DNA from: Octopus sinensis | Lineage: Eukaryota | Assembly: GCF_006345805.1 (NCBI RefSeq) | Contig: NW_021834197.1 | Location: forward strand, 1-50,711 | Direction: 5' to 3' | Length of the DNA stretch: 50,711 bases | Shown here: piece after piece, positions 3,746 to 47,812 of the stretch | How positions within the stretch are numbered: position 1 is the stretch's first letter | Layout: each line of letters starts with the position of its first letter | Notes under the pieces: model-generated | Databases searched by the model: none | What the model saw: the letters and a program-made list of their open reading frames with translations, nothing else | What the model was told of the DNA's origin: nothing | Made by a program: the position numbers and the translations under genes

Positions 3746-4155
3746 ACTCTTTTACTCTTTACTGTTTCAGGCATTGACTGCGGACATGCTGGAGCACCAC
3801 CTTTAGTCGAGCAAATCGACCCGGGACTTATTCTTTGTAAGCCCAGTACTTATTCTATCGGTCTCCTTGCCGAACCGGCTATGGGACGGGGACGTAAACA
3901 CACCAGCATCGGTTGTCAAGCAATGCTAGGGGGACAAACACAGACACACAACACACACACACACACAATATATATATATATAAATACATATATACGACAG
4001 GTTCTTTCAGTTTCCGTCTACTAAATCCACTCACAAGGCATTGGCCGGCCGGGGCTATAGCAGAAGACACTTGCCCAAGATGCACGCAGTGGGACTGAAC
4101 CCAGGAACCATGTGGTTGGCTAGCAAGCTACTTACCACACAGACACTCCGCGCCT
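3746..4155 (-). mobile_element. tRNA-headed SINE family A, full length
   Basis: Family head has A-box TGGCTGTGTGG and B-box GGTTCAGTCC, then CCTTGGGCAAG (CORE-like), an internal (TA)n/(CA)n and a tail ...GCAGTCAAATGACTGAAACAAGT(AAAAGAGT)n. Many near-identical copies occur in the window; this one is somewhat diverged. Confidence 0.85.
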
Positions 4156-4175
4156 ATATATATATATATATATAT

Positions 4176-4250
<75 letters not shown>

Positions 4251-4775
4251 TATATAAGTATGCTGGATGTATGTATGCGTGTATGCTTTAATTCTTAATA
4301 GCTTTCCTCTTGAAATCTGCGGCCATGCTGGGGCACCACTGTTGGTTGATAGATAAAAAGTAGAGTAAGATAATATGAATGTGTGTGTGTGTGTGTGTGT
4401 TTACATGAATGTGTTTATATTTGTGTGTGTGCGTGTGTGCATACTTATATGTGTATGTGTGTGTGTGTTTGCATACTTGAGTGTATGTATGTGTGTACTT
4501 GAGTGTGTATGTATGTGTATGTGTATACTTGAGTGTGTGTATGTGTGTGTATGCGTATACTTGAGTGTGTGTTTGTGTGTCCTTGTGTGTTGTCTGTGTG
4601 TATGTATGTATATATTTGAGTGTGTAGGTGTGAGTGTGTGACTGAAGCAAGAATCAGATTAAAAATACACACACACACACACACACACATATACATGATG
4701 CCTTCTCCTATTGGAAATGACTGATTGGAAATTAAGGATTTCCTCAATTTTTTTGCCAAACAACCGGAGCAAACA

Positions 4776-5351
4776 CAGGAGCAGCTGTGTGGTAAGTAGC
4801 TTGCTTACCAACCACATGGTTCCAGGTTTCAGTCCCACTGCATGGCACCTTGGGCAAGTGTCTTCTGCTATAGCCTCGGGCCGACCAAAGCCTTGTGAGT
4901 GGATTTGGTAGACGGAAACTGAAAGAAGCCGGCATATATATATAGGCGTTGGAGGGGTTGGTGGTATGTGGTAAGTAGCTTGCTTACAACCACATGGTTT
5001 CCAGGTTTCAGTCCCACTGCATGGCACCTTGGGCAAGTGTCTTCTGCTATAGCGGGGCCCCCAAAGCCTTGTGAGTGGATTGGTAGACGGAAACTGCAAG
5101 AAGCCCGGTATATTATATATAGGCGTTGGGTGGGTTGTGTGGTAAGTAGCTTGTTACCAACCACATGGTTCCAGGTTTCAGTCCACTGAATGGCACCTGG
5201 GCAAGTATCTCTGCTATAGCCTCGGGCCGATAACCAAAGCCTTGTGAGTGGATTTGGTAGACGGAAATGAAAGACCCAATGTATATATTATTATATATAT
5301 ATATGTATATATATATATATTATATATATAATATATTATATGTATATATAA

Positions 5352-5390
<39 letters not shown>

Positions 5391-5552
5391 TATAGGCATC
5401 GGAGTGGCTGTGTGGTAAGTAGCTTGCTTAACCAACCACATTGTTTCAGGTTCAGTCCCATAGTGTGGCCCTTGGGCAAGGTCTTTACTATAGCCTCGTA
5501 AGTGGATTTGGTAGATGGAAACTGAAAGAAGCCCACCGTATATATGTATGTG

Positions 5553-5587
<35 letters not shown>

Positions 5588-12034: not shown

Positions 12035-12572
12035 ATGCCTGATTCAGGAGAAATAGATGTTCTTACACCAACATTAAGTTTACCAGAACGAAGAAGGGCT
12101 GGATTGAAACTGGAATTCGGTTCTTTGAATGTCGTGAGCAAGAAATGCAAACTGGAAAGTTTATCAGCCGATGTCGGCCTGTCTGATATGTCGAACGGTA
12201 CTTTACGCCGGGCGCGAACTATAACCACCAACGAACTGGCCGGACGTTTGTCGTCGGGTCGCGCAAAAAGTATGCTGATTGTTGACTGTCGGCCCTTCTT
12301 GGAGTACAATATGTCACACATACGGGGCGCAATCAACGTCAACTGCATCGATCGGTTAAACCGCAAAAAACTGCAACAAAAGGGTAAAGTGGCTCTGGTC
12401 GACTTGGTCACCACGAAGGAGGGCAAAGAGATGTTTCGGAGACGGTCTGCCAAGGAGATTATCTTGTACGACACTTGTACGAGAGATGAAAGCCACTTAA
12501 GCAGGGACAATGCAATCACAGCCATCCTCAGTTTACTGTACTGGGAGGGAAAAGAGGCATTTATTTTAAAAG
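12035..12572 (+). CDS. DUSP10: Dual-specificity MAPK phosphatase (MKP5-type), coding exon 1: N-terminus plus rhodanese/Cdc25-homology MAPK-binding domain
   Basis: ATG at 12035. The translation contains IVDCRPFLEYNMSHIRGAINVNC, DRLNRKKLQQKGKVALVDLV (KIM) and EGKEAFILKG, closely matching the vertebrate DUSP10 rhodanese domain as I recall it. Donor G|GTGAGT at 12572/12573, phase 1. Confidence 0.95.
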
Positions 12573-12789: not shown

Positions 12790-14140
12790 TTCTTTCGCGG
12801 CTTCAACTGGGGGCAAACAATAACAAAGAAGGACCTATTGTATAACGTAATCATATCTACTTTATATCTGATTAACAGACTGGATAGGCATGTCTGGGAC
12901 ATCTCTGTTCATAAGTGCACCATGGTATCAGATAGAACATCTTTGATCGTGGCTCTACTGGATCAAGCCTGACTTGAGGCCAAACGATAACAAAGACGGA
13001 CACATCAGATAATGCAGTCTCGGGTAACCTATACCTGAATTAATTACAAGATGGTCACAGCAAGATCAGATCTGCCCGATCACAACTGATAGAGCTGAAC
13101 AATGACAACAGAACCATCTTTCGTTTATCTCCATTTGTACAGCACTTCTCATATATTGTGCCATGTATGTTGTTGTACGAATAGCAGGTCAACCCTAAAA
13201 ATGTAGACAGACCCTAAGGTCAAAGGGCATCGTATTTCTTCTCTCTTTTGTTTTCATGTTTAATTTTTGCTTATGAAATAGTGTAACTCCTCACTCACCC
13301 ATTTCTCAAGCCCCAGGAGAAAAGGTGAGAGGTTCTCGAATCAATTCTAACCCTTTACCTTAATGACTGACGAAAGAAAAGTTTTGTGACTCCTTATGCA
13401 GCCCCATCCCTGAAGGGTTTGAGTTGGGGTGATTCCCCTGTTCCCTTCTATCGCTCTACAGCTCGCCAACCTTCCAAATAACCCAGACGAACAGTTTATC
13501 TGATGTCGCCTAAAGATGCGATTTGAGGAAAATTTGGTCGCAGCTTTTAGCATTTGCAAGCCACCACGTAGAGGTCTCTCGTTGATTGGCGGCGAGTGTC
13601 AAATGCTGTTGTTATTTAGCTCCGGGTCAGTCTTGATCCAGGAGACCTATGATCAAAAGCGTTCCAGCTGTGACCACCCCGTCCTTTACTCCGACATAGT
13701 GTATCTAGAACTATATTATCTAACGTGTCCTTCTCTTTCCTGTTGTTGTTGTGTAGCCCAGGGTCAGTCCTGGTCAAGCAGACCTATGATCAAAAGTATT
13801 CCAGCTGTGATTATTTTATCTTTTATTCATAGTGTATCTAGGACTACATTATCTAATGTGTCCCTCCTTGTTGCTGCTGATTAGCCCCAGGTCAGTCCTG
13901 ATCCAGTAGACCTATGTTCAAAGACGTTCCCGCTGCGACCATCCTGTCTTTTATTCTGACACACTATATCTTGGATTTTATAAATCCTTGTTGTTTAGCC
14001 TCCTTGTTGTTTAGCCCCAGGATCTATGATCAAAGGCATTCCTGCTGTGACCACCCTGTCTTTTTATTCAGACATAGTTTCTTGAACTACATTATGTAAT
14101 GTCCTTCCTGATTTCTTTTTATAGACTGTAAGGCTCAATA
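12790..14140. repeat. Repeat family G: degenerate (-) copies 12790-13110 and a (+) tandem array of ~130-bp units at 13615-14140
   Basis: Recurring GGTCAGTCCTGATC..AGACCTATGATCAAAG..TTCCAGCTGTGACC..ATAGTGTATCTAGGACTACATTATCTAATG at 13619, 13756, 13884 and 14013. Further copies lie at 28590-28920. Confidence 0.75.
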
Positions 14141-19392: not shown

Positions 19393-19534
19393 GTGCTAAC
19401 CAACCACATGGTTCCGGGTTCAGTCCCACTGCGTGGCATCTTGGGCAAGTGTCTTCTGCTATAGCCCCGGGCCGACCAATGCCTTATGAGTGGATTTGGT
19501 AGACGGAAACTGAAAGAAGCCCGTCGTATATATG

Positions 19535-19569
<35 letters not shown>

Positions 19570-19772
19570 TTGTCCCCCTAGCATTGCCTGACAACCGATG
19601 CTGGTGTGTTTACGTCCCCGTCACTTAGCGGTTCGGCAAAAAGAGACCGATAGAATAAGTACTGGGCTTACAAAGAATAAGTCCCGGGGTCGATTTGCTC
19701 GACTTAAAGGCGGTGCTCCAGCATGGCCGCAGTCAAATGACTGAAACAAGTAAAAGAGTAAAGAGTATATAT
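19393..19772 (+). mobile_element. SINE-A, slightly 5'-truncated
   Basis: B-box, body and AAAAGAGT tail are present. Confidence 0.88.
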
Positions 19773-20894: not shown

Positions 20895-22859
20895 ATGATG
20901 TCATACTCCATATTTAGCTGTGAAACCCTGACAGCATGGAGTGTACAGGGTGCCAAAAGGGTTGCTAGAAAGAGCAACCAAATCTACTGCTGCTGGATCG
21001 GCGTGGTGGTATAGGAAGGGGTTCTTTGGGGGTCGGGTAGAGACAAATAACAACAAAGGCAGCAAGCAATAACAACAATTATTTCTGGAGCCAACAAGAT
21101 TGCTTGAAATAACAGCTAAATCTATAGAAATTGTTACATGAAGTCTGCTATTGGAGATCAGGGTTAAGCTAGGACTTCACAACAATGCTAACCAGAGGAG
21201 GCACTTGGTAGCTATGTACGTTAGAAATAGCAGCCAAATCACCGTTAGATTATTATAGGAGTTCCTTTACTGGATCAGGATGACCTAGGGTGGATCAACA
21301 ATAGCCTTGATATGTCAATAGGGGAGGTACATAGTGGCTACGTCAGCTAGAAATAGCAGCTAAATCTCTGTTGTATTATCATAGGTCTGCTTTGGAAAGT
21401 CATGCTTGAATAGCTGCTAAATCTCTGAATTGTCATAGAAGGCTTGCTACTGGATCATGACTGACCTGGGGTTAAACAACAACAACAACAATAATAACTA
21501 TCACAACTGATATAGCTACAGCTGGCCAACAAAGGATTCCGCTAAGTGATTGCTAGAAATAGCAGCAACATATCCGTCAAATAATGGTAAATCTGTTGGA
21601 TCAAGGCTGACTTGGAGTTAAATATTACAACTACAGAAGCTGTGATCTAAACAATGAGTACATTCTACGTGGTCGTTGTATATGCTAAAAATAGCAGCTA
21701 AATCTCACTGAAACCGCGTTAGCTTTCTGCCTTAATTTAGGAAAAGATTCCATCAGATGATGACGTCATTCCAAATACATTTAGCTCGATAAGGCGTTGT
21801 GGTCAGGGCTAGAAGGTCTTGTATCATAAGTTTGTTGTTTGTACTAATTTAAGGAAACCTAGGGTTAAATAACAATGACATACCAACAGCATACTCTTTT
21901 ACCCTTTTACTAGTTTCAGTCATTTGACTGCGGCCATGCTGGAGCACCGCCTTTAATCGAGCAACTCGACCCCGGGACTTATTCTTTTTGTAAGCCCAGT
22001 ACTTATTCTATCGGTCTACTTTTGCTGAACCGCTAAGTGACGGGGACATAAACACACCAGCATCGGTTGTCAAGCAATGCTAGGGGAACAAACACACTCA
22101 CACAAACACACACACGCATATATATATATATATATATATACACACAAATACACACACGCATATACATATATATATATACATATATATATCTAATATATAT
22201 ATAATAATATATATATATATATATATAAATACACACACAACCACACACACACATATATATATATACATATATATATATACATATATATGACGGGCTTCTT
22301 TCAGTTTCCGTCTACCAAATCCACTCACAAGGCTTTGGTCGGCCCGGGGCTATAGCAGAAGACACTTGCCCAAGATGCCACGCAGTGGGACTGAACCCGG
22401 AACCATGTGGTTGCTAAACAAGCTACTTACCTCACAGCCACTCCTATGCCTATATTAAACCACACACATACATATATATATATATACATATATACGACGG
22501 GCTTCTTTCAGTTTCCGTCTACCAAATCCACTCACAAGGCTTTGGTCGGCCCGAGGCTATAGCAGAAGACACTTGCCCAAGGTGCCACGCAGTGGGACTG
22601 AACCCGGAACCATGTGGTTGCTAAACAAGCTACTTACCACACAGCCACTCCTGCGCCTCAAGTTTCATATATAAAATTTTAAAAAAATTTGCTTTTAAGG
22701 CAGATCTTCCCACATTCTTCCAATGCCTTTTTTTTCTGTTCTTTTCTTTCTCCTGGTGAGGGTAAGATCTCACTCAATCTATGAAGCTATGTAAATACAA
22801 GGAGAACAACAGCAATTGTAGCATCATCCTGGAATGATGATGTCATGTGCTATATTTAG
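20895..22859. promoter_or_regulatory. Putative intronic CRE(-variant)/MEF2 enhancer modules
   Basis: TGATGTCA+CCATATTTAG (20896-20917), CTAAAAATAG (21685-21694) with ATGACGTCAT (21760-21769), and TGATGTCA+CTATATTTAG (22838-22859). Confidence 0.45.
21893..22658 (-). mobile_element. SINE-A full copy plus tandem extra head
   Basis: Full copy at 21893-22445 and second head at 22495-22658. Confidence 0.88.
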
Positions 22860-23029: not shown

Positions 23030-23757
23030 TACTAGAAATAGCAGCCAAATCTCCCACAAATTACACCTTACCGTCTTGGGCCATGAGGGAAACCTCTAAG
23101 TGATAGATAAATCTGGAAGAAATAGCAGCCAAATCTCCCTCAAATTACACCTTTCCGTCTTATTAATGTTCATATGTGAAGGAAACCTCTAAGTGATAGA
23201 TAAATGTGGTAGAAATAGTAGCCAAAATCTCCCTCAAATTACACCTTACCGACTTATTAATGTTTGTGTGTATGAGCCAGTGAGGGAAACCTGTAAGTGA
23301 TAGATACATCTGGTAGAAATAGCAGCCAAATCTCCCTCAAATCACACCCTACTGTTTTATGTATGTATATATGAATGTATGAGCCAATGAGGGAGACCTC
23401 TACATGGTAGCTAAGCCTGGTAGAAATAGCAGCCAAATCTCCCTCAAATCACACCCTACTGTTTTATGTATGTATATATGAATGTATGAGCCAATGAGGG
23501 AGACCTCTACATGGTAGCTAGACCTGGTAGAAATAGCAACCAAATCACACCTTACAGTCGTATGCATGTATGTGTGTATGCATGTATGAGCCAATGAGGG
23601 AGACCTCTACATGGTAGCTAGACCTGGTAGAAATAGCAGCCAAATCTCCCTCAAATCACACCCTCCTGCCTTATGTATGTATATATATATAACGGGAAGC
23701 TTTATGAAAATAGACAAAAGACGAAGGCAGGTGGAAAACAAACGAACAATTGTATTA

Positions 23758-25125: not shown

Positions 25126-25721
25126 TTGCAAATAAGCAACTCTGTATTAATTTTTACGGTTCATAGGATCATAATCAAGGGGGCTTCGTCAGATAGATGG
25201 TTTGGTAAATAGATGGGTACATGACTAGTTGTCTTATGAATTAGTTTGGTACATTGGTAGCTGGGCAGTTTGGATACCAAGGTGGCTTGGTACAGAGATG
25301 AGTTGTTGGCTAAGCGACTTGGTGAGCAGGTGGGTTGGTGGCTAGGTTTCTTGGTCAATAGATGGGTAGACATCTTGATGGTTTGGTCGGTAGGTAGGTA
25401 AATTGCTTGGTAAATAGATGGACGGCTCGTTATCTAGCTAGCTTGTTGAGTTAGAGGTTAATCAGAGAGATAGGTAACTTGATGGATGCATGGAGTGGTA
25501 GCTAGGTGGGTAAGTAGATGATCAGTTAATTATGATTTTATTCAACATATCCTCCTCCAAGATTCTTACATTTATTGCAGCGGCCCCCTTCAATTTTTCT
25601 AAGCCCTTGTAAAAGAATTTGGAAGGTTGGGCTTCCAACCAGGTCTTTCGCGACACCCTTAAAGCCAGGAACCGTAGATAGATAGGTAGATGGATGGATG
25701 GATAGATATATAGATATATAT

Positions 25722-25915
25722 TTCTTTATTGCCCACAAGGGGCTAAACATAGAGGGGACAAACAAGGACAGACAAAGGGATTAAGTCGATTACATCGACC
25801 CCCTACCCAGTGCGAAACTGGTACTTTATTTATCGACCCCGAAAGGATGAAAGGTAAAGTCGACCTCGGCGGAATTTGAACTCAGAACGTAACGACAGAC
25901 GAAATACCGCTAAGA
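25722..25915 (-). mobile_element. SINE-B, head truncated
   Basis: Matches the family B body and tail. Confidence 0.88.
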
Positions 25916-26295
25916 TATATAGATAGATAGATACGGACGGACATTAAGAGAGCTGTAGGCGACTAAGGATTAAGGTTTAAATATTTTAAAATTCATTCTT
26001 AGATATATATCTTGACCGGACATAGCTTTTTTTATAACTCGTCATCTCCTGAAATTAGATAGATGTAGATAAGTAGTTAAGTGGTATGTAAGAGAGAGAA
26101 AACGGACTTTCGTAGAATTCCTGTCTGCCAAAATTCCATTCACAAAGTATTAGTCATCTCGAGACTGTAATCAGAGAAAGAACACTTGCCCCTCCACCAA
26201 CCCACCCAAGACTGCGCTCAAGGATCGCTTGAACCCGGCACCATTTTGTCGTGAATCAAGCTTCTTAACGACGTGTCCAGTTTGTCATTGGCTCC

Positions 26296-26337
<42 letters not shown>

Positions 26338-26499
26338 GTGTGTGTGTGTGTGGTGCCGAGGCGTGCGCCGGTCACACGTCTGACGCGAGCCGACACCGCG
26401 TCTACGTTTATCTGCTGACCCAGTTTCGAAACAGCAGCTGGCAAGACGTAGGATGCGTCATAGGTTAGGATGTGTGGCGGGGTGGATGGTTGAGGTAAG

Positions 26500-27370
26500 G
26501 TAAGATGGCTAGAAAAAGAAAGGTAGGTAGGTAGATAGATGTAGGCAGAGAGAAATAAATTGATAGATTGATAAAAGAAATAGGTAGTTATAGAGGTAGA
26601 TAGGTAAGTAGGTAGGTAGATAGATAGATAGACAGAGGTACAGAGAAAGATGGATAGATAGATAGAGGGTAGAGAGAAATAGGTAGATAGATAGATTGAG
26701 GGTAGAGGGAAATAGATAGATAAGCAGATAGAGAGAGAGGCATAGACAGAGGTACAGAGAAAGATGGATGGATAGATAGATAGAGGGTAGAGAGAAATAG
26801 GTAGATAGATAGATTGAGGGTAGAGGGAAATAGATAGATAGACAGATAGAGAGAGAGAGAGAGAGGCATAGACAGAGGTACAGAGAAAGATGGATAGATA
26901 GATAGAGGGTAGAGAGAAAGATGGATAGATAGATTGATAGAGGGTAGAGAGAAATAGATAGATAGATAGATAGATATGTGTGCATATATGAGAGAGAGAG
27001 AGAGAAATAGATAGATAGATAGATGGAGGGTAGAGAGAAATAGGTAGATAGATAGATTGATAGAGGGTAGAGAGAAATAGATAGAGGGTAGAGATAGATA
27101 GATAGAGGGTAGAGAGAAATAGATAGAGGGTAGAGAGAAATAGATAGATAGAGGGTAGAGAGAAATAGATAGATAGATAGAGGGTAGAGATAGATAGATA
27201 GAGGGTAGAGAGAAATAGATAGATAGAGGGTAGAGAGAAATAGATAGATAGATAGAGGGTAGAGAGAAGTAGGTAGAGAGAAATAGATTGATAGAGGGTA
27301 GAGAGAAATAGGTAGATAGATAGAGGGTAGAGAGAAATAGATAGATAGTGGGTGGAGAGGGATAGACATG
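26500..27370. repeat. (GATA)n/(GA)n compound minisatellite (GAGGGTAGAGAGAAATAGATAGATA-like units)
   Basis: Read directly from the sequence. Confidence 0.92.
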
Positions 27371-28190
27371 TAGTTAGGGTACCTATCTTAAGTTTTTTTC
27401 CATTGTTTAACCGTGGGTCACTTTTGATCACGTAAATCTGAGCTACCGTAACCGAACGTTTCAATGTGTCCATGTTTTGGGGGTTTATTTCTTATTTTTA
27501 TTTATATTTCATTACATTTAGGATGTAATTTGAGGAGGGAATGGTAATTGCTATTTCTAGCTAAGTCGGTCGTGAAACCAGGTAGAGGCGGGGGCTGCTT
27601 AGGTTTTGCGTATGTATGTGTGTGTAATTATGTATTTTTGCATTTGTATGAGCTGTGTATATATGCATGTATAGATGTGTGTAAATGTATATGTATACGT
27701 GTAAACGTGTATATATTTATATTCATGTTCGTGCATATGTCCGTCTGTCTACCTGTCTCTCTGTCTATGTATATACACGCACACGTAATTAATTGATTTT
27801 GTCGAGCTTAATAAAAGCAATTTAACATAAAACTGAATGATCATTCGATACTTTTTGTTGAGTACATATCTATTATATACCTTTACAAGGATTGTGTTGA
27901 CGGAGACTTAATCAGAAACCTGGAAAGTCCTTGAGACCGAAGGTTCCAGAAAATCGATGTAATTCCCGTGTGTATGCGCGGGCGCGCATGTGTTCATAGC
28001 TGTTTATTCATCAAACAGGATAATCTAAGTGTATATAATATATAAAACGACACAAATTCATAAACTAGAATGTTTGTATAACTTTATTGTATCTACGAAG
28101 CAATACCAGATACTCAATGACCAAGATATTCGTACAAATGTATTTGTGAAACAACACACATATAATATAATCTTCCGTTTCTATTTGCAG

Positions 28191-28370
28191 GGGGTTTACG
28201 GGAATTCAAGTCAAAACACGAAAATCTATGCGACAATTTACTATGGATGCCGTCAGAATGTCGTTTGTTATCGTCAGAGTGTCGTATAGTACACAGTCCT
28301 TTGACGCCATTAGTTGAACATCAAATCGAAGCAGCCGAGGTTTCACGAATATTGCCTTTTCTCTATTTAG
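28191..28370 (+). CDS. DUSP10: DUSP10 coding exon 2 (180 nt, phase 1-1): end of rhodanese domain, linker, start of catalytic domain
   Basis: Acceptor TTTGCAG| at 28190 and donor TTAG|GTGAGA at 28370. Reads (G)GLREFKSKHENLCDN...IEAAEVSRILPFLYL(G), in frame with exon 1. Human DUSP10 has LKGGLSSFKQNHENLCDN...IENAELTPILPFLFLG. Not in the ORF track because it has no in-frame start long enough. Confidence 0.95.
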
Positions 28371-29565
28371 GTGAGAACCGTTTTTTATAATCATTTAGAA
28401 TATTATCATTCACCATCCATTGTTTGTCATCAATCATCAATCAAATTTTAGACCTAATTTTGTGTTTCGTTTTGAGATTTTTCCCTTCTCCACCCCGTCC
28501 TTGCTTGGTTTGGACGATGTCTTGCCTCTCCAGCACTGCCGCCATGTTGTTGTCTTTTGTGACTATCGTCACTATCATTTCTCCATGCCTTCCTCTGCCA
28601 TATATATGGCCCATCTTTTATTCAGATATTGTGTATCTAGGACTACATCATCTAATGTGCCCTTGCTATTGTTTAGCTCCAAATTAATCCTGATCTTGTA
28701 CGCCAATTATGAAAATTACTCCAGCTGTTAGCTTCCTGTCTTTTATTTAGATATGGTGTACCTAGCACAACCTTATCTTTCCTCCCTATTGTAAGACTCC
28801 TGTTCAGCCTTGATCCAATACACCAGTGATCAATGGACAATCCAGCTGACACCATGTTTTTTCTTCATTCGGTCATAGTGTATCTAGGACTACATTATCT
28901 AATATGTTCTTTGTTCTTCAACCCCTAGTTTGAGGGTTATGTCATCTAATATGTCCTGGTTGATACTTTTTAGCAAGTAGAACAAACCACATGGGACCTT
29001 CCTTAATTTCGTTGGGCAGTGGTTCTAAATAGGGAGATTACAGTCTTGAGATGACTAATATATCGTGAATGGAATTTTGGCAGACAGGAATTCTATGAAA
29101 GTCCGTTTTCTCTCTCTTACATACCACTTAGCTACTTATCTACAAACCACATCGGGCCTTCCTTAATTTTATTGGGCAGTGATTCTAAATAGTGGGGGAT
29201 ACAATGTTTTCAGGGTCTACATGAATAAAAGGGGACATTTGTAAGGTCACTAAAGTTTCTGAGGAGACCACAGATGTTTTTTTAGGGGTCACGCACAACT
29301 TTAACTGCCAGACAAGCATACAATCACCTTTTAAAGTGTCATACAAATAAAATGGGATGTTTGTAGTGTCACTGACGTTTTATTTCTCTGGGGTTCATGT
29401 TTCAGAGGAGAACGCAGAAGTTTTTGAAGGGGTCATAGACAGCTTTAACTTCTAGATCGACAGCATCAATCTTTATAGGGTTCACATTGTCAGAACTTTC
29501 AATTTAAAACAAAAATCTAGGCCTTGTACCTATAGTAAAAAGGATTGTTATTATTATTATTATTA

Positions 29566-30164
29566 AGGTGCTGGAGAAAAGAATTCAAGCATTTCATCTG
29601 TCTTTATGTTCTGAATTCAAATTCCACCGAGGTTGACTTTGCCTTTCATCCTTTTCGGGCTCAATAAAATAAGGACCAGTTGAGCACTGGGAGTCAATGT
29701 AATCAATTTAACCCAACTCCCCTGAAATTGCAGTCCTTGTCCCAAAATTGGAAATATTATCATTATTAACAAGGTGGTGAGCTGGCAGAACCGTTAGCAC
29801 ACTGGGCGAAATACTTAGCGGTATTTCACTCGTCGCTCTGTTCAACTTTGCGTTCGTCCATTTGGAGTCGATAAATTAAGTAAGTACCAGTTGAGTACTA
29901 GAGTCAATTCAACTGACCAGTCGCCTCCCAACCAAATTTCAGGCCTTGTGCCTTTAGTAGAAAGGATTATTATTATTATTGCATTTTATCTATCATCTAT
30001 CTTTACATTCTGAGTTCAAATTCCACCATGCCCCACCATGCTCAGTTTTGCCTTTCGTCTTTTCGGGGTCGATAAATTAAGTACCAGTTGAGTTCTGGGG
30101 TCAATGTAATCGACTTACCTCCTCCCCAAAATTGCTGCCCTCGTGGCAAAATTTGTAACCATTA

Positions 30165-30208
<44 letters not shown>
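29566..30208 (+). mobile_element. Three stacked degenerate SINE-B-related copies, each ending in an (ATT)n tail
   Basis: Copies at about 29566-29770, 29771-29980 and 29981-30208, sharing the GTCGATAAATTAAGTACCAG-like core. Confidence 0.75.
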
Positions 30209-30212
30209 TCAG

Positions 30213-30398
30213 GTAACGAGCGAGATGCTGGTAATTTACAAATTCTGAAAGAGTTAGATATAACTTATATTTTAAATGTCACGTCACATGTTCGACCCCA
30301 TTTCGAGAGTCAAGGCATTCATTACAAAACGATACCAGTAACGGACAGCGGTCACCAAAATCTACGGAAGTACTTTGATGATGCCATAGAATATATAG
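30213..30398 (+). CDS. DUSP10: DUSP10 coding exon 3 (186 nt, phase 1-1): DSP catalytic domain N-half with general-acid Asp
   Basis: Acceptor TTTCAG| at 30212 and donor ATAG|GTAAAT at 30398. Reads (G)NERDAGNLQILKELDITYILNVTSHVRPHFESQGIHYKTIPVTDSGHQNLRKYFDDAIEYI. Asp284 lies in PVTDS. Confidence 0.95.
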
Positions 30399-30777
30399 GT
30401 AAATATCAATCTATTTGTATGTCTGTAACCATCTGTGCATCATACTTGATTACATACATGTTTGAAAGGCAAATTTATTGTGATATTTGTCCAGAAATAA
30501 CATCTCTTATGGGTGTTCTGTGTTGAAAAGCACAATGTATATTGTGGGCAGATGAAAATTTTCTCACTTGCTGTTGCTGGGGCGATTTTTGACCCCTTTC
30601 ATATATATATTGTGTTTTTAGGCACAGCATGTTCACGAGATGTTATCTCTGGACAAGTGGTGCTGTAAATTTGCCTTTCAACTGTGTATTTATGTAAAGT
30701 TGATACATACGTAGATGGCTGTTTTCACCTAATGCTCCTTTTATTATGCATAACTAATCTATCTATGAAATATAAGT

Positions 30778-31160
30778 GTAAGAGTGACTGTGTGGTAAGA
30801 AGCTTGCTTCCCAACCACATGATTCCGGGTTCAGTCCCACTGCATGGCACCTTGGGCAAGTGTCGTCTACTATAGCCTCAGGCTGACAAAAACCTTGTGT
30901 GTTTGGTAGACAGAAACTGAAAGAAGCCCATCATACATGTATGTGTGTGTGCGCACACGCACATCTGTATTTGTGCCCCCATCACTGCTTGGCAACATAT
31001 GTTGGTATGTTTACATCCCTGTGACTTAGCGGTTCAGCAAAAGACAATGACAATAAGTACTAGGCTTTAAAAATAGGTTCTGGGGTTGATTTGTTTGACT
31101 AAAATTCTTCAAGGTGGCGCCTCCAGCATGAGGTCACAGTCAAATGAATGAAATAAATAA
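30778..31160 (+). mobile_element. Degenerate SINE-A
   Basis: Head, CCTTGGGCAAG and tail are recognisable. Confidence 0.75.
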
Positions 31161-32535: not shown

Positions 32536-32911
32536 GAACACACAGACACACAACACAACTCACAACACGCTTCGACTCCGACTCCGACTGCTGAAAGCCG
32601 AAGCGGCGGCGGCGGTGGGAGGAGGAGGAGGAGGAGGGAAAGTGAGGGAGAAGGAAAGCAAACAACCAAATCGGCTGGAAAAACAGAGGACGTTCACCTT
32701 GTACTAATAGGCATAGCGTAGTGGCGGTGGCGGTGGTGGCGGTGGGAGTACTAGAAATGGTAGTGGTGATGGTGTGAGGGGGGGGGTAAGTGAAGTCAGT
32801 CGCTGCTGCTGATGCCGCCGTCGCTGAGAGAACTTTTCTGACTTAATGACTCATCGACGCATGCACCCCCCCCCCTCGCCATCTCCTTTTTCTCTCCGTT
32901 AGTAAAGCATA

Positions 32912-33332
32912 TACTCTTTTACTCTTTTACTTGTATCAGTCATTTGACTGCGGCCATGCTGGAGCACCGCCTTTTTTAATCGAGCAAATCGACCCCGGGA
33001 CTTATTCTTTTTGTAAGCCCAGTACTTATTCTATCGGTCTACTTTTGCCGAACCGCTAAGTAACGGGGACGCAAACACACCAGCATCGGTTGTCAAGCAA
33101 TGCTAGGGGGACAAACACAGACACACAAACATATACACACACATACACATATATATATACATATACACGACAGGCTTCTTTCAGTTTCCGTCTACCAAAT
33201 CCACTCACAAGGCATTGGTCGGCCAGGGGCTATAGTAGAAGACACTTGCCCAAGATGCCACGCAGTGGGACTGAACCCGGAACCATGTGGTTGGTAAGCA
33301 AGCTACTTACCACACAGCCACTCCTGCGCCTA
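32912..33332 (-). mobile_element. SINE-A full length
   Basis: Matches the family consensus. Confidence 0.9.
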
Positions 33333-35133: not shown

Positions 35134-35389
35134 TACGTAATGGCAGACGAAATACCTATTTCTTTACTACCCACAAGGGGCTAAACACAGAGGGGACAAA
35201 CAAGGACAGACAAACGGATTAAGTCGATTACATCAACCCCAGTGCGCAACTGGTACTTAATTTATCGACCCCGAAAGGATGAAAGGCAAAGTTGACCTCG
35301 GCGGAATTTGAACTCAGAACGTAGCGGCAGACGAAATACTGCTAAGCATTTTGCTCGGCATGCTAACATTTCTGCCAGCTCACCGCCTT
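35134..35389 (-). mobile_element. SINE-B with run-on start of a second body
   Basis: Has the same GAAATACC|TATTTCTTT junction as the 5858 multimer. Confidence 0.85.
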
Positions 35390-35461
35390 CCAGTCAAACC
35401 CTCTAACCCATGCCAGCATGGAAAGCAGATGTTAAATGATTTTTTTTTTTTTTTTTTTTTT

Positions 35462-35853
35462 TTTACTTGTTTCAGTCATTTGACTGCGGCCATGCTGGAG
35501 CACCGCCTTTAATCAAGCAACTCGACCCCGGGACTTATTCTTTGTAAGCCCAGTACTTATTCTATCGGTCTCTTGTGCCGAACCGCTAAGTGACGGGGAC
35601 ATAAATACACCAGCATCGGTTGTCAAGCAATGCTAGGGGGACAAACGCAAGCATATACACACACATATATATATATATATATACATATATACGACGGGCT
35701 TCTTTCAGTTTCCGTCTACCAAATCCACTCACAAGGCTTTGGTCGGCCCGAGGCTATAATAGAAGACACTTGCCCAAGGTGCCACACAGTGGGACTGAAC
35801 CCGGAACCATGTGGTTGGTAAACAAACTACTTACCACACAGCCACTCCTGCGC
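35462..35853 (-). mobile_element. SINE-A full length, about 110 bp upstream of the exon 4 acceptor
   Basis: Matches the family consensus. Confidence 0.9.
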
Positions 35854-35966
35854 CCTGATGATGATATTTTTCTTGAAGTTTGTAAATTTCTTATGATGTC
35901 AACAACAAAAAATTCTGTTCATTTTATCTTAGATTTTAATTTTCTTTTCCTTTTGTTTATTTGCAG

Positions 35967-36241
35967 ATGAGGCCAAACGAAACGGCGCCAAGATCTTAAT
36001 CCATTGTCAAGCTGGGGTATCACGGTCGGCAACGGTGACCATCGCATATTTATTGAAACACTCCACCCTCAGTATGACAGATGCTTACCGATACGTAAAG
36101 CAGAAGCGTGCCATCATTTCGCCGAATTTTAACTTCATGGGACAACTTATGGAGTTTGAACAATCCTTAAACAACGGACTCTCGCCTCGAATCCATGAGA
36201 AATCCCGAGAAGAGTTTGATGAGATTGACCGCTGGTTATAG
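35967..36241 (+). CDS. DUSP10: DUSP10 coding exon 4: active-site P-loop and C-terminus, stop TAG
   Basis: Polypyrimidine tract plus TTGCAG| at 35966. Reads (D)[31 protein letters not shown]...[27 protein letters not shown]...RWL*. Catalytic Cys315 codon at 36005-36007, 31 residues after Asp284. Spliced CDS is 538+180+186+275=1179 nt, i.e. 392 aa. Confidence 0.96.
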
Positions 36242-37516
36242 CGAAGCGTCCAGTTTTTGTAAATCCTGTGTATATCTTTTGATTGTATCTATACGCACGC
36301 GCGCGCATGTGTGTGTGTTTGAGAGAGAGAGAGAGAGAGAGCAAAGTGAAACGAGAGGAGTCGTGGCCGAAAGAGGCTTCTCGTAGCAACATGTCTTTCG
36401 GCTCAAAGCCGCGAATTGACCAAGCCAGTCAGGGAAAAATAAAAAGCTGTCTTTGATGGAGAAGTGCGTTCGATATATCTTCCAGGTTCCATCAACCGCC
36501 TGGGAGATTGTTTTGGGATTTTTCTTTTGTTTTTTTTTTGTCACATACGCATGCTGTGTGTCACACCTACTGAGTCTGTAACGTGAAGACAACGTAAAGA
36601 CATGCAAATATATGGTACACGTGTGTGCGTGTGTGTGTGTGTGTGTGTGTGAGACTTGCGAATCGGTCTAATGAAGCTAGTCTTATTAAATCTCTCTCTC
36701 TATCTCTCTGTCTTGAAACAAACGATAAATGAGTGATGGTGAAAATTCCTCAAAAATAGCCAATTCACAAATGCAATCAACTAATCAAAACACACAACTA
36801 CTACCACTGCTGTCATCACCATCAATCATTTGCCATTGTAATATAATATATATATATATATATGTATGTATATATGTATGTATATATGTATGTATGTATA
36901 TGTATGTATGTATATATATGTATGTATATATAGTATGTATGTAATGTATATATATATATGGTATATATATATATAATGTATTATATATATATGTATGTAT
37001 ATATATGTATAATATATATGTGTGTATATATATATATATATAATATATGTATATATATGTGTGTGTATGTAGTCTGAACAGTATTGATACAAATGTCACT
37101 AGTCAGAAATAATAATGATAATAATAATAATGACTACAGCAACCCTTCTGAACACACTAAAATATGCTACCAGTGATACGTTGAGGTCGATGGTATTTGT
37201 TAAAGCCCCCTTCAATCTCAAAACTGCTGGCCTTGCACCAAAATCAGAAACAATTATTATTATTATTATTGTTATTATCAGTTGACCATCACTCCTCATC
37301 TCTCCTTTTCTCAGAATGTGTGTGTGTGTGTGTGATATCTGTAATAGTAGTGTTGTTATTTGCAATAATCTTCCCTTTTTGTGTGGTGTGTGTATAATAT
37401 ATGTATGTATGTATGTGTATATATACACACATACCATCTGGAAGATGTAAGAGATGTGGGAGAGAGAGCAGGTAAAGACAGGTCTTGTAACAATGGCATT
37501 GACAGATGGTGTTGAA

Positions 37517-44934: not shown

Positions 44935-44984
<50 letters not shown>

Positions 44985-45148
44985 GACAGGCTTCTTTCAG
45001 TTTCTGTCTACCAAATCCACTCACAAGGTTTTGATCGGCCCAAAGCTATAGTAGAAGACACTTGCCCAAGGTGCCACGCAGTGGGACTGAACCCGGAACC
45101 ATGTGGTTGGTAAACAAGCTACTTACCACACAGCCACTCCTGCGCCTA
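44725..45148 (-). mobile_element. SINE-A full length, followed by (CATA)n (45150-45590) and an extra head (45648-45790)
   Basis: Matches the family consensus. Confidence 0.88.
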
Positions 45149-47210: not shown

Positions 47211-47812
47211 TTTCTCTTTTACTTGTTTCAGTCATTTGACTGCGGCCATGCTGGAGCACCGCCTTTTAGTCGAGCAAATCGACCCCAGGACTTATTCTTT
47301 GTAAACCCAGTACTTATTCTATCGGTCTCTTTTGCCGAACCGCTAATTATATACATATATATAATTTCAAACCATATAAAGGCGCAGGAGTGGCTGTGTG
47401 GTAAGTAGCTTGCTAACCAACCACATGGTTGCGGGTTCAGTCCCACTGCGTGGCATCTTGGGCAAGTGTCTTCTGCTATAGCCCCGGGCCGACCAATGCC
47501 TTGTGAGTGGATTTGGTAGACGGAAACTGAAAGAAGCCTGTCGTATATATGTATATATATGTATATATGTATATATATGTATATATATGTGTGTGTGTGT
47601 GTGTGTTTGTGTGTCTGTGTTTGTCCCCCTAGCATTGCTTGACAACCGATGCTGGTGTGTTTACGTCCCCGTCACTTAGCGGTTCGGCAAAAAGAGACCG
47701 ATAGAATAAGTACTGGGCTTACAAAAAGAATAGGTCCCGGGGTCGAGTTGCTCGACTAAAGGCGGTGCTCCAGCATGGCCGCAGTCAAATGACTGAAACA
47801 AATAAAGAGTAA
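47211..47812. mobile_element. SINE-A tail fragment (-) 47211-47346 and full copy (+) 47380-47812
   Basis: Matches the family consensus. Confidence 0.88.

What the first reader, a model, noticed from the sequence alone, without database searches (positions are those of the whole stretch)
26065..29198. Private inverted duplication brackets the frame-symmetric exon 2
26065-26172 (intron 1) is copied in reverse at 29036-29143 (intron 2) with about 6 mismatches in 108 bp. The copy includes unique flank plus a heavily diverged SINE-like part, so it is a local templated copy and not two independent insertions. The intron 2 copy sits between ~55-bp direct repeats (about 28984 and 29144), a template-switch signature. 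Exon 2 (180 nt) and exon 3 (186 nt) are both phase 1-1. Pairing could therefore promote in-frame skipping (removing the rhodanese end, linker and RILPFLYL strand) or exon 2 circularisation. Opposed SINE-B and family-G copies add further flanking complementarity.
Basis: partly seen in the sequence, partly recalled or inferred. Interest (0 to 1): 0.7.

Follow-up and report, generated by a model that had tools for sequence, protein, structure and literature searches.

The report
Old inverted intron copy around DUSP10 exon 2
A 109-base piece of decayed SINE in intron 1 of an octopus DUSP10-like phosphatase gene was copied in reverse into intron 2 at least 34 million years ago. The copy is real and could pair across exon 2 in the RNA, but it evolves like ordinary intron and Octopus vulgaris has lost one arm, so it looks like an ordinary, dispensable repeat pair.

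Summary
Window 26064-26172 and 29036-29144 are reverse complements: 109 nt, 6 mismatches. The intron 2 copy lies between 51-nt direct repeats (28982-29032 and 29142-29192, 90% identical). Exon 2 (180 nt) and exon 3 (186 nt) are both phase 1-1.

The window is an Octopus sinensis scaffold carrying a 4-exon DUSP10-like gene. The pair is not private to this genome: O. bimaculoides (split about 34 My ago) has both arms and both direct repeats with the same junctions. O. vulgaris (split about 2.5 My ago) lacks the right arm through a 199-bp deletion, yet its protein has 100% BLASTP identity over full length.

The left arm is the 3' end plus degenerate tail of an old SINE related to the abundant G family. 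The right arm shares 42 of the 49 left-arm departures from the G consensus, so it is a local copy. A template switch is the most likely origin.

The arms are not significantly better conserved than the surrounding intron (92.1% vs 88.5%, p=0.12). The predicted 109-bp RNA duplex (-184 kcal/mol) loops out exon 2. No transcript evidence for skipping or circularisation could be obtained. It is most likely a neutral inverted repeat and a probable ADAR substrate.

The parts
26064..26172 (+). Left arm, the source copy, in intron 1, 2018 nt upstream of exon 2
   Evidence: Orthologs in O. vulgaris (L001 24548-24656) and O. bimaculoides (L002 ~23560-23666).
26040..26296 (-). Old, decayed tRNA-type SINE related to the abundant G family. 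Its sense strand is the window's minus strand: body ~26096-26296, degenerate tail ~26040-26095. The left arm is its 3' end plus tail.
   Evidence: Alignments to G copies and G consensus: ~58-60% identity, 6 of 8 consensus CpGs lost, GC>AT 38 vs AT>GC 20.
29036..29144 (+). Right arm, the derived inverted copy, in intron 2, 665 nt downstream of exon 2
   Evidence: Ortholog in O. bimaculoides L002 26600-26708; absent in O. vulgaris.
28982..29035 (+). Direct repeat 1: target sequence, upstream copy. 51 nt by the repeat finder; extends to GGAG.
29142..29192 (+). Direct repeat 2: duplicated target. Its first 3 nt (ACA) overlap the end of the arm, giving junction microhomology.
29033..29231 (.). Segment missing in O. 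vulgaris: a 199-nt deletion removing the right arm, direct repeat 2 and 39 further nt, with AG/GG microhomology at the junction
28191..28370 (+). Exon 2 of the DUSP10-like gene, 180 nt, phase 1-1, residues 180-239: end of the rhodanese domain, the linker, and the ILPFLYLG start of the DSPc domain
30213..30398 (+). Exon 3, 186 nt, phase 1-1
12035..12572 (+). Coding part of exon 1 (ATG at 12035)
35967..36241 (+). Coding part of exon 4 with HCQAGVSRS active site and stop codon
25716..25914 (.). SINE-B copy just upstream of the left arm. It is opposed to the two intron 2 copies and extends the predicted closing stem.
29591..29714 (.). Opposed SINE-B fragment in intron 2 (80.6% over 129 nt to 25778-25905)
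29993..30117 (.). Second opposed SINE-B fragment in intron 2 (73% over 131 nt)

Best explanation
This is a one-off, ancient, local DNA rearrangement that now behaves as neutral intronic sequence.

In a common ancestor of O. sinensis/O. vulgaris and O. bimaculoides, 109 nt from the tail end of an old SINE in intron 1 of the DUSP10-like gene were copied in reverse orientation into intron 2, 2.86 kb away. At the same time 51-55 nt of the target were duplicated. By a rough rate calculation this happened no more than about 8 My before the ~34-My split. The most likely cause is a double template switch during replication or break repair: out to the nearby template, then back 51-55 nt behind the exit point.

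In the pre-mRNA the two arms can form a 109-bp, nearly perfect duplex that encloses exon 2 in a ~2.9-kb loop. The expected consequences are hyper-editing by ADAR and, at most, low-level exon 2 skipping or back-splicing. Nothing indicates that the gene depends on it. O. vulgaris removed the right arm by a 199-bp microhomology deletion.

Shown: the anatomy, the direction of copying, the age, the loss in O. vulgaris, the lack of excess conservation, and the thermodynamic potential. Inferred: the template-switch mechanism, ADAR editing, and any splicing effect.
For: - Anatomy.
- Same arms, same junctions and both direct repeats in O. bimaculoides, so this was one event before a split dated ~34 My (PMC10700109).
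- Star-like site patterns: 0 paralog-supporting sites in the 109 arm columns and in the ~52 ungapped repeat columns. The duplication therefore only shortly preceded speciation.
- Direction: the SINE body continues beyond the arm only at the left locus. The right arm shares 42 of 49 left-arm-specific states.
- Locality: there is no third copy in the window or in loci L001-L003. A source 2.86 kb away is natural for a template switch and very improbable for retroposition, which inserts genome-wide.
- Neutrality: inter-species identity is 92.1% for the arms and 88.5% for ungapped intron background, Fisher p=0.12. Exons are 98.6%.
- Dispensability: 199-nt deletion of 29033-29231 in O. vulgaris, with protein at 100% BLASTP identity over full length.
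- RNA potential: -183.9 kcal/mol (O. sinensis) and -167.7 kcal/mol (O. bimaculoides). 106 of 109 cognate pairs form in the minimum-free-energy fold of 25650-30260. The left arm has no competing inverted partner inside intron 1.
- In octopus, most A-to-I editing is in introns and 3'UTRs, and circRNAs are low overall (PMC9699675).
Against: - Two alignment columns (13 and 85) carry the same state in both arms within a species but differ between species. My rough Poisson estimate gives P about 0.01 for independent parallel hits. This could mean selection for pairing, or gene conversion between the arms.
- Four of the 6 mismatches are G-U wobbles in the sense RNA. That is not significant (4 of 5 transitions, P about 0.19).
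- The arm point estimate (92.1%) is above background.
- No RNA data were examined, so a regulatory effect is not excluded.
- The O. vulgaris deletion rests on one assembly and could be polymorphic.
- The copy ends inside the SINE tail with the tail next to the downstream repeat. That is also the layout of a 5'-truncated retroposed SINE.
Confidence: 0.7

Rival explanations
1. The pair is a selected long-range RNA bridge. Left-right pairing loops out exon 2 and tunes in-frame skipping or production of a 180-nt exon 2 circle. The skipped protein would lack the end of the rhodanese domain, the linker and the first strand of the catalytic domain. The pairing has been maintained for more than 34 My.
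For: - A very stable duplex is retained in two lineages: -184 and -168 kcal/mol.
- It is the strongest of only 3 inverted pairs across exon 2, and the left arm has no intra-intron competitor.
- Two double (both-arm) changes occurred.
- Exon 2 is symmetric and free of stop codons.
- Inverted repeats of 30-40 nt are enough for circularisation in human reporters (PMC4201285).
- Inverted Alu pairs are associated with exon skipping (PMC2533698, PMC13019944).
Against: - There is no significant excess conservation.
- The right arm is deleted in O. vulgaris.
- The direct repeats, which have no pairing role, are equally well kept (91%).
- A single annotated protein isoform exists in both arm-bearing species.
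- circRNAs are low in octopus.
- Longer SINE pairs bracket exons 2 and 3 together and would compete.
- A protein without the ILPFLYLG strand is unlikely to fold (inference from the Pfam DSPc boundaries).
Confidence: 0.1
2. The arms are two independent retropositions of one unsampled, older G-related SINE subfamily. The right copy would be a 5'-truncated insertion made by target-primed reverse transcription, and the 51-55-nt direct repeats would be its target-site duplication. A variant of this idea is a retrocopy of the left copy's own transcript.
For: - The right copy has the layout repeat, truncated body, tail, repeat, with the SINE 3' tail next to the downstream repeat.
- The left copy is only ~58% identical to the G consensus. 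At the local rate that is too diverged to be a simple decayed G copy, so it probably belongs to a separate older family.
- A 3-nt ACA overlap at the tail junction would suit priming.
Against: - No other member of such a family exists in the 50.7-kb window or in L001-L003, whereas G has ~16 copies in the window.
- Two copies of a rare family, or a retrocopy of the left copy, landing 2.9 kb apart is improbable.
- Both copies share the same complex degenerate tail (30 of 32 nt identical).
- The repeat of 51-55 nt is far longer than the ~11-12-nt duplication at the one clean lineage-specific insertion examined.
- The A box of the left copy is disrupted.
Confidence: 0.17
3. The inverted copy is an assembly artefact of the short, unplaced O. 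sinensis scaffold.
For: The window is a whole 50,711-bp scaffold.
Against: The same structure is present in the independent O. bimaculoides assembly with 34 My of accumulated differences.
Confidence: 0.01

Closest known systems
Inverted SINE/Alu pairs in flanking introns that promote exon circularisation or exon skipping (PMC4201285; PMC2533698; PMC13019944)
   Same: The arms are reverse-complementary, SINE-derived sequences in the two introns flanking one exon. They are well above the 30-40 nt shown to suffice in reporters. The predicted duplex loops out a symmetric exon. Further opposed SINE copies lie alongside.
   Different: The arms are not two independent insertions of an active family. 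They are one local copy of an already decayed element. No back-splice or skipped transcript has been observed. The animal is a cephalopod, where circRNAs are reported to be low (PMC9699675). One close species has lost an arm.
Template-switch mutations and FoSTeS/MMBIR-type templated inverted insertions (PMC5453318; PMC8794818; PMC7954356)
   Same: An inverted copy of nearby sequence, a source within a few kb, short microhomology at both junctions, and creation of a new RNA-pairing potential in a single event.
   Different: The published short-range events mostly replace sequence within tens to hundreds of bases. Here the source is 2.86 kb away, the insert is 109 nt, and 51-55 nt of target were re-copied. 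No empty ancestral site was recovered.
5'-truncated SINE retroposition with target-site duplication
   Same: A truncated body with the 3' tail next to the downstream repeat, and flanking direct repeats.
   Different: The duplication is 51-55 nt, and the tail is the same degenerate sequence as in the left copy. No other family members were seen, and the insertion is next to its apparent source.
ADAR substrates formed by intronic inverted repeats (as summarised for octopus in PMC9699675)
   Same: A long, nearly perfect intramolecular dsRNA in introns of a nervous-system-rich editing species.
   Different: Editing at these sites has not been examined.

Membership tests
Intronic inverted-repeat pair driving circRNA formation or exon skipping | Reverse-complementary sequences in both introns flanking the exon | tested here: met
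   109 nt, 94.5%. It is the strongest of 3 cross-exon-2 pairs.
Intronic inverted-repeat pair driving circRNA formation or exon skipping | Cross-exon pairing favoured over pairing within one intron | tested here: met
   The left arm has no inverted partner inside intron 1 and the right arm has none of note inside intron 2. 106 of 109 cognate pairs form in the minimum-free-energy fold. This is in silico only.
Intronic inverted-repeat pair driving circRNA formation or exon skipping | Observed back-splice (28370->28191) or skip (12572->30213) junction | not testable with these tools
   The junction-peptide search returned nothing, but it also missed the canonical protein, so it is uninformative. 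The only assembled mRNA is canonical. There are no isoform labels in NCBI names.
Intronic inverted-repeat pair driving circRNA formation or exon skipping | The event depends on the arms | not testable with these tools
   A natural right-arm deletion exists in O. vulgaris, but no RNA data are available here.
Selected long-range RNA structure | Arms more conserved than neighbouring intron | tested here: not met
   92.1% vs 88.5%, Fisher p=0.12. The direct repeats are 91.2%.
Selected long-range RNA structure | Compensatory double substitutions | tested here: inconclusive
   Two columns changed in both arms within a lineage. This is also explained by gene conversion or arm-to-arm template switching (PMC8604942, PMC8794818).
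Selected long-range RNA structure | Retention in related species | tested here: not met
   Kept in O. bimaculoides, lost in O. vulgaris. Not alignable in Argonauta.
Template-switch / MMBIR templated insertion | Insert matches nearby sequence in inverted orientation and carries that copy's private changes | tested here: met
   42 of 49 left-arm-specific states are shared. The source is 2863 nt away.
Template-switch / MMBIR templated insertion | Microhomology at the switch points | tested here: met
   1 nt (G) at the repeat 1/arm junction and 3 nt (ACA) at the arm/repeat 2 junction, read. This is short, so the support is weak.
Template-switch / MMBIR templated insertion | Ancestral empty site in an outgroup | tested here: inconclusive
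   The absence in O. vulgaris is a secondary deletion that also removes 39 nt beyond repeat 2. Argonauta introns do not align.
SINE retroposition by target-primed reverse transcription | Target-site duplication of ordinary length | tested here: not met
   51-55 nt, against ~11-12 nt at the one clean insertion examined.
SINE retroposition by target-primed reverse transcription | Other copies of the same subfamily in the genome | tested here: inconclusive
   None in the window or L001-L003. No octopus genome can be searched here. The metagenome scan gave 0 hits.
tRNA-derived SINE (the left-arm host element) | Alignable over its full length to a tRNA-type SINE with A and B boxes | tested here: inconclusive
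   It aligns over its full length to the G consensus at ~58%. The B-box-like GGTTCAAGCG is kept and the A-box region is disrupted by an insertion.
MAP kinase phosphatase (DUSP10-like) | N-terminal rhodanese domain plus DSPc domain with the HCxxGxxR loop | tested here: met
   Pfam Rhodanese 65-187 (E 1.7e-14) and DSPc 237-367 (E 6.2e-44). HCQAGVSRS is present. The protein is 100% identical to the annotated O. vulgaris protein.

The most novel reading that the evidence does not exclude
A single template-switch mutation more than 34 My ago created a 109-bp RNA bridge across the symmetric exon 2 of DUSP10. The bridge has since been kept pairable, with two both-arm substitutions and mostly G-U mismatches. 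It sets the level of an exon-2-less, catalytically dead MAPK-binding isoform or of a 180-nt circle with an endless reading frame. Its recent deletion in O. vulgaris would then be a species-specific change in MAPK-phosphatase regulation.
Probability: 0.06. Interest if true: 0.5.

Novelty: new member of a known kind. Interest (0 to 1): 0.2.

Why it matters
Taken alone this is an ordinary feature of a SINE-rich genome. Inverted repeats flanking exons are common, and this one shows no sign of selection.

Its modest value is as a clean natural experiment. Two species that split only about 2.5 My ago (O. sinensis and O. vulgaris) differ by presence or absence of one arm of a 109-bp cross-exon duplex. 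Their protein and flanks are otherwise nearly identical, and a third species (O. bimaculoides) keeps both arms. Existing RNA-seq could therefore test directly, in a cephalopod, how much a single strong intronic duplex contributes to exon skipping, back-splicing and ADAR editing.

It is also a datable example of a kilobase-range templated inverted insertion with a long target duplication.

Tried and rejected
- Rfam scan of the whole window at gathering thresholds found no hits, so no known RNA family is involved.
- Scan of JGI metagenome contigs for a 26-nt invariant arm core found 0 hits, as expected. It says nothing about the octopus genome.
- The Argonauta hians ortholog (L003) has no homolog of the arms or the direct repeats. 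The introns are too diverged, so there is no outgroup empty site.
- A protein-database search with a chimeric skip plus back-splice junction peptide gave one unrelated DSPc hit. It did not return even the canonical octopus protein, so it is uninformative.
- Exact look-ups of 10 spurious ORFs around the arms and exon 2, meant to pull Logan genomic contigs from other octopods, found none in the collection.
- I tried to measure target-site duplications of G-family copies directly. The result was confounded by (TA)n/(TG)n tails and tandem or composite arrangements. Only one clean orthologous-gap example was obtained.
- Idea rejected: the left arm lies in a conserved non-coding element. The apparent 94% block is typical of ungapped intron here.
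- Idea rejected: O. vulgaris holds the ancestral empty site. Its gap also removes 39 nt that both other species keep downstream of repeat 2.
- Idea rejected: loss in O. vulgaris by recombination between the direct repeats. The breakpoints lie outside repeat 2 and share only 4 nt.
Full report
**What the window is.** The window is a complete 50,711-bp scaffold of Octopus sinensis. The cluster member XP_029656707.1 sits on a contig of exactly that length. It carries a four-exon gene for a 392-aa dual-specificity MAP-kinase phosphatase of the DUSP10 type.
- Pfam finds Rhodanese at residues 65-187 and DSPc at 237-367, and the active site is HCQAGVSRS.
- The coding exons are 12035-12572, 28191-28370, 30213-30398 and 35967-36241, all with AG/GT boundaries.
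- The joined translation is 100% identical to the annotated O. vulgaris protein.
- A spliced Logan mRNA contig from another octopod (SRR3401912, L004) aligns with breaks at these same four exons.
- Exon 2 is 180 nt and exon 3 is 186 nt. Both are phase 1-1, and removing exon 2 keeps the frame.

**The observation.** It is correct.
- The repeat finder reports arms 26064-26172 and 29036-29144: 109 nt, 94% complementary, 2863 nt apart. BLAST gives 94.5%, and there are exactly 6 mismatches.
- The right arm sits between direct repeats 28982-29032 and 29142-29192 (51 nt, 90%).
- No third copy of the arm or of the direct repeat exists in the window.
- Across exon 2 there are only three inverted pairs, and this is the strongest. 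The other two are opposed SINE-B fragments: 25778-25905 against 29591-29714 (80.6%) and against 29993-30117 (73%).
- G-family and composite SINE pairs of up to 392 nt at 91-93% bracket exons 2 and 3 together.

**What the arm is made of.** Aligning the left region with six window copies of an abundant repeat shows an old relative of that family.
- The family is a tRNA-type SINE, here called G, with about 16 copies in the window at 80-97% identity to the copy used as query.
- From about 26096 to about 26296 the window's minus strand is the old relative of this SINE. The stretch 26040-26095 is its degenerate, microsatellite-like tail.
- The left copy is only ~58-60% identical to the G consensus. 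It has lost 6 of 8 consensus CpGs, shows a GC-to-AT bias (38 vs 20), and has a disrupted A-box region.
- The 109-nt arm therefore equals the last ~77 nt of the SINE body plus 32 nt of tail. It is not 'unique flank plus SINE-like part'.
- The SINE body continues past the arm boundary only at the left locus. The left arm is therefore the source and the right arm the copy.
- At the 49 aligned sites where the left copy departs from the G consensus, the right copy has the left-copy state at 42 and the consensus state at 1. The right copy is thus not an independent insertion of the common family.

**Orthologous loci.** I fetched the O. vulgaris locus (L001, OX597843.1) and the O. bimaculoides locus (L002, CM046630.1).
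- O. bimaculoides has the left arm, the right arm and both direct repeats, with the same junctions. Its second repeat is followed by GGAG, as the first is, so the duplicated target was 55 nt.
[quoted passage not shown] That split is given as about 34 My, against 2.5 My for O. sinensis vs O. vulgaris (PMC10700109). The duplication is not private to this genome.
- O. vulgaris has the left arm but lacks window 29033-29231. This is a 199-nt gap that removes the right arm, repeat 2 and 39 further nt that both other species retain. AG/GG microhomology lies at the junction, and the retained repeat 1 is identical to that of O. sinensis.
- Given the phylogeny and the extra 39 nt, this is a recent secondary deletion and not an empty site.
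- Argonauta hians (L003) has no alignable counterpart.

**Timing and mode of evolution.** The four arms (left and right, in O. sinensis and O. bimaculoides) give a star-like pattern over 109 columns.
- 92 columns are invariant, 13 are singletons, 2 fall in an indel, 0 group the two left arms against the two right arms, and 2 (columns 13 and 85) group both arms of one species against both arms of the other.
- The direct repeats show 10 variable columns, none grouping by paralog or by species, and nothing else informative.
- With roughly 3.9% change per lineage since the split, zero paralog-supporting sites in 2 x 161 nt puts the duplication no more than about 8 My before the speciation. This is my rough Poisson bound.
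- The two both-arm changes are more than independent hits predict (about 0.16 expected; P about 0.01, rough estimate). They could reflect selection for pairing. They could equally reflect gene conversion or arm-to-arm template switching, which is known to homogenise inverted repeats (PMC8604942, PMC8794818).

**Conservation between O. sinensis and O. bimaculoides.**

| Region | Identity |
|---|---|
| Arms (both) | 92.1% |
| Left arm | 94.4% |
| Right arm | 89.9% |
| Direct repeats | 91.2% |
| Other ungapped intron columns | 88.5% |
| Exons | 98.6% |

The difference between arms and background is not significant (Fisher p=0.12). The sliding profile shows that 90-96% is typical of non-microsatellite intron here.

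**Origin.** Three routes fit the repeat-arm-repeat layout.
- (a) A double template switch during replication or repair: out to the plus strand 2.86 kb upstream, then back 51-55 nt behind the exit point.
- (b) A retrocopy of the left copy's transcript.
- (c) Two insertions from an unsampled older subfamily, the right one 5'-truncated.

For (b) and (c), the copy ends in the SINE tail and the tail abuts the downstream repeat. Against them:
- Retroposition has no reason to land 2.9 kb from its source.
- No other family member is seen in the window or in L001-L003.
- The two copies share the same complex degenerate tail.
- The 51-55-nt duplication is far longer than the ~11-12 nt at the one clean lineage-specific insertion I could read.

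Junction microhomologies are 1 nt and 3 nt. I put (a) at about 0.7, (c) at about 0.2 and (b) at about 0.05. A genome-wide BLAST would settle it, and it could not be run here.

**Function.** The RNA potential is real.
- Duplex energy is -183.9 kcal/mol in O. sinensis and -167.7 in O. bimaculoides, against -28.9 +/- 4.5 for shuffles. Four of the six mismatches are G-U in the sense transcript. That is not significant.
- In the minimum-free-energy fold of 25650-30260, 106 of 109 left-arm bases pair with their cognate right-arm base. The adjacent SINE-B pairs mostly with 29591-29714, extending the stem.
- In human systems 30-40-nt inverted repeats suffice for circularisation (PMC4201285), and inverted Alu pairs are linked to exon skipping (PMC2533698, PMC13019944).

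No evidence shows that it operates or matters here.
- There is no excess conservation.
- The right arm is deleted in O. vulgaris while the protein has 100% BLASTP identity over full length.
- NCBI names carry no isoform label in O. sinensis or O. bimaculoides.
- The only assembled transcript is canonical.
- Octopus circRNAs are reported to be low overall, which the authors of PMC9699675 consider consistent with ADAR repression.
- A skipped product would lack residues 180-239, including ILPFLYLG at the start of the DSPc domain. I infer that it would not fold into an active phosphatase.

My attempts to reach RNA-level evidence through the protein collections were uninformative.

**Verdict.** The 'local templated copy' reading is supported, and 'private' is wrong. 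The splicing and circRNA role is unproven, and the evolutionary evidence leans towards a neutral, dispensable inverted repeat that is probably an ADAR substrate. The feature is a new member of a well-known kind. Its main use is the natural presence/absence contrast between O. sinensis and O. vulgaris.

Noticed in passing
window 19394-19770 vs 32909-33300 and 35461-35819; also 22283-22673 vs 30760-30942: Long inverted SINE pairs (up to 392 nt at 91-93%) lie in intron 1 and intron 3 and bracket exons 2 and 3 together (366 nt, also in frame). They are longer than the pair in the finding and would compete with it or favour a two-exon loop.
   Followed up: partly
window 3969-5563, 22267-22681, 33149-33331, 35157-35854, 44958-45147, 47380-47571: G-family SINE bodies are repeatedly followed by (TA)n(TG)n and then the same second repeat (TTTGTCCCCCTAGCATTGCTTGACAACCGATGC...). 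G and this element often occur as one composite unit of ~390 nt. Two G copies are in tandem at 22267-22681.
   Followed up: partly
window 26500-27400: A ~0.9-kb block of TAGA/GAGA-type micro- and minisatellite in intron 1 (periods ~21-29 and ~118 nt) gives a spurious 402-aa ORF on the minus strand (26265-27473).
   Followed up: no
window 28610-28960, related to 13612-14100: Roughly 123-125-nt tandem units lie immediately upstream of the first direct repeat, with relatives in intron 1. The stretch 28775-28974 is the least conserved part of intron 2 against O. bimaculoides (46-64% per 50 nt).
   Followed up: no
window 12945-13109: A 165-nt insertion just downstream of exon 1 is present in O. sinensis and absent in O. 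bimaculoides. It is flanked by an ~11-12-nt target duplication (AGAAC(C)ATCTTT). Its type was not identified.
   Followed up: partly
window 29192/29193 vs L002 ~26762-26779: O. bimaculoides has 18 extra nt (GGAGCCACTGGTACAAGT) right after the second direct repeat that O. sinensis lacks. This is a small deletion in the O. sinensis lineage or an insertion in O. bimaculoides.
   Followed up: no
window 28191-28370: Exon 2 is 180 nt, has no in-frame stop, contains an in-frame ATG (28247), and stays in frame across a back-splice. A circle of it would carry an endless reading frame. This is a consequence of its length and phase, not evidence of translation.
   Followed up: no
P0002 / L003 (Argonauta hians): The Argonauta ortholog is annotated at 633 aa, with long Gly/Ser and Asn/Thr-rich low-complexity insertions in the N-terminal region, the linker and the C-terminus, compared with 392 aa in Octopus.
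   Followed up: no
P0024 (Logan, 2 contigs, 1905 nt): A related octopod contig encodes exon 1 (97% identical) and then reads straight into intron 1. It is either genomic DNA or an intron-retaining transcript.
   Followed up: no
window 26290-26350 and 36300-36345: Long (TG)n abuts the head of the old SINE, and (GT)n(GA)n lies in the 3'UTR just after the stop codon.
   Followed up: no
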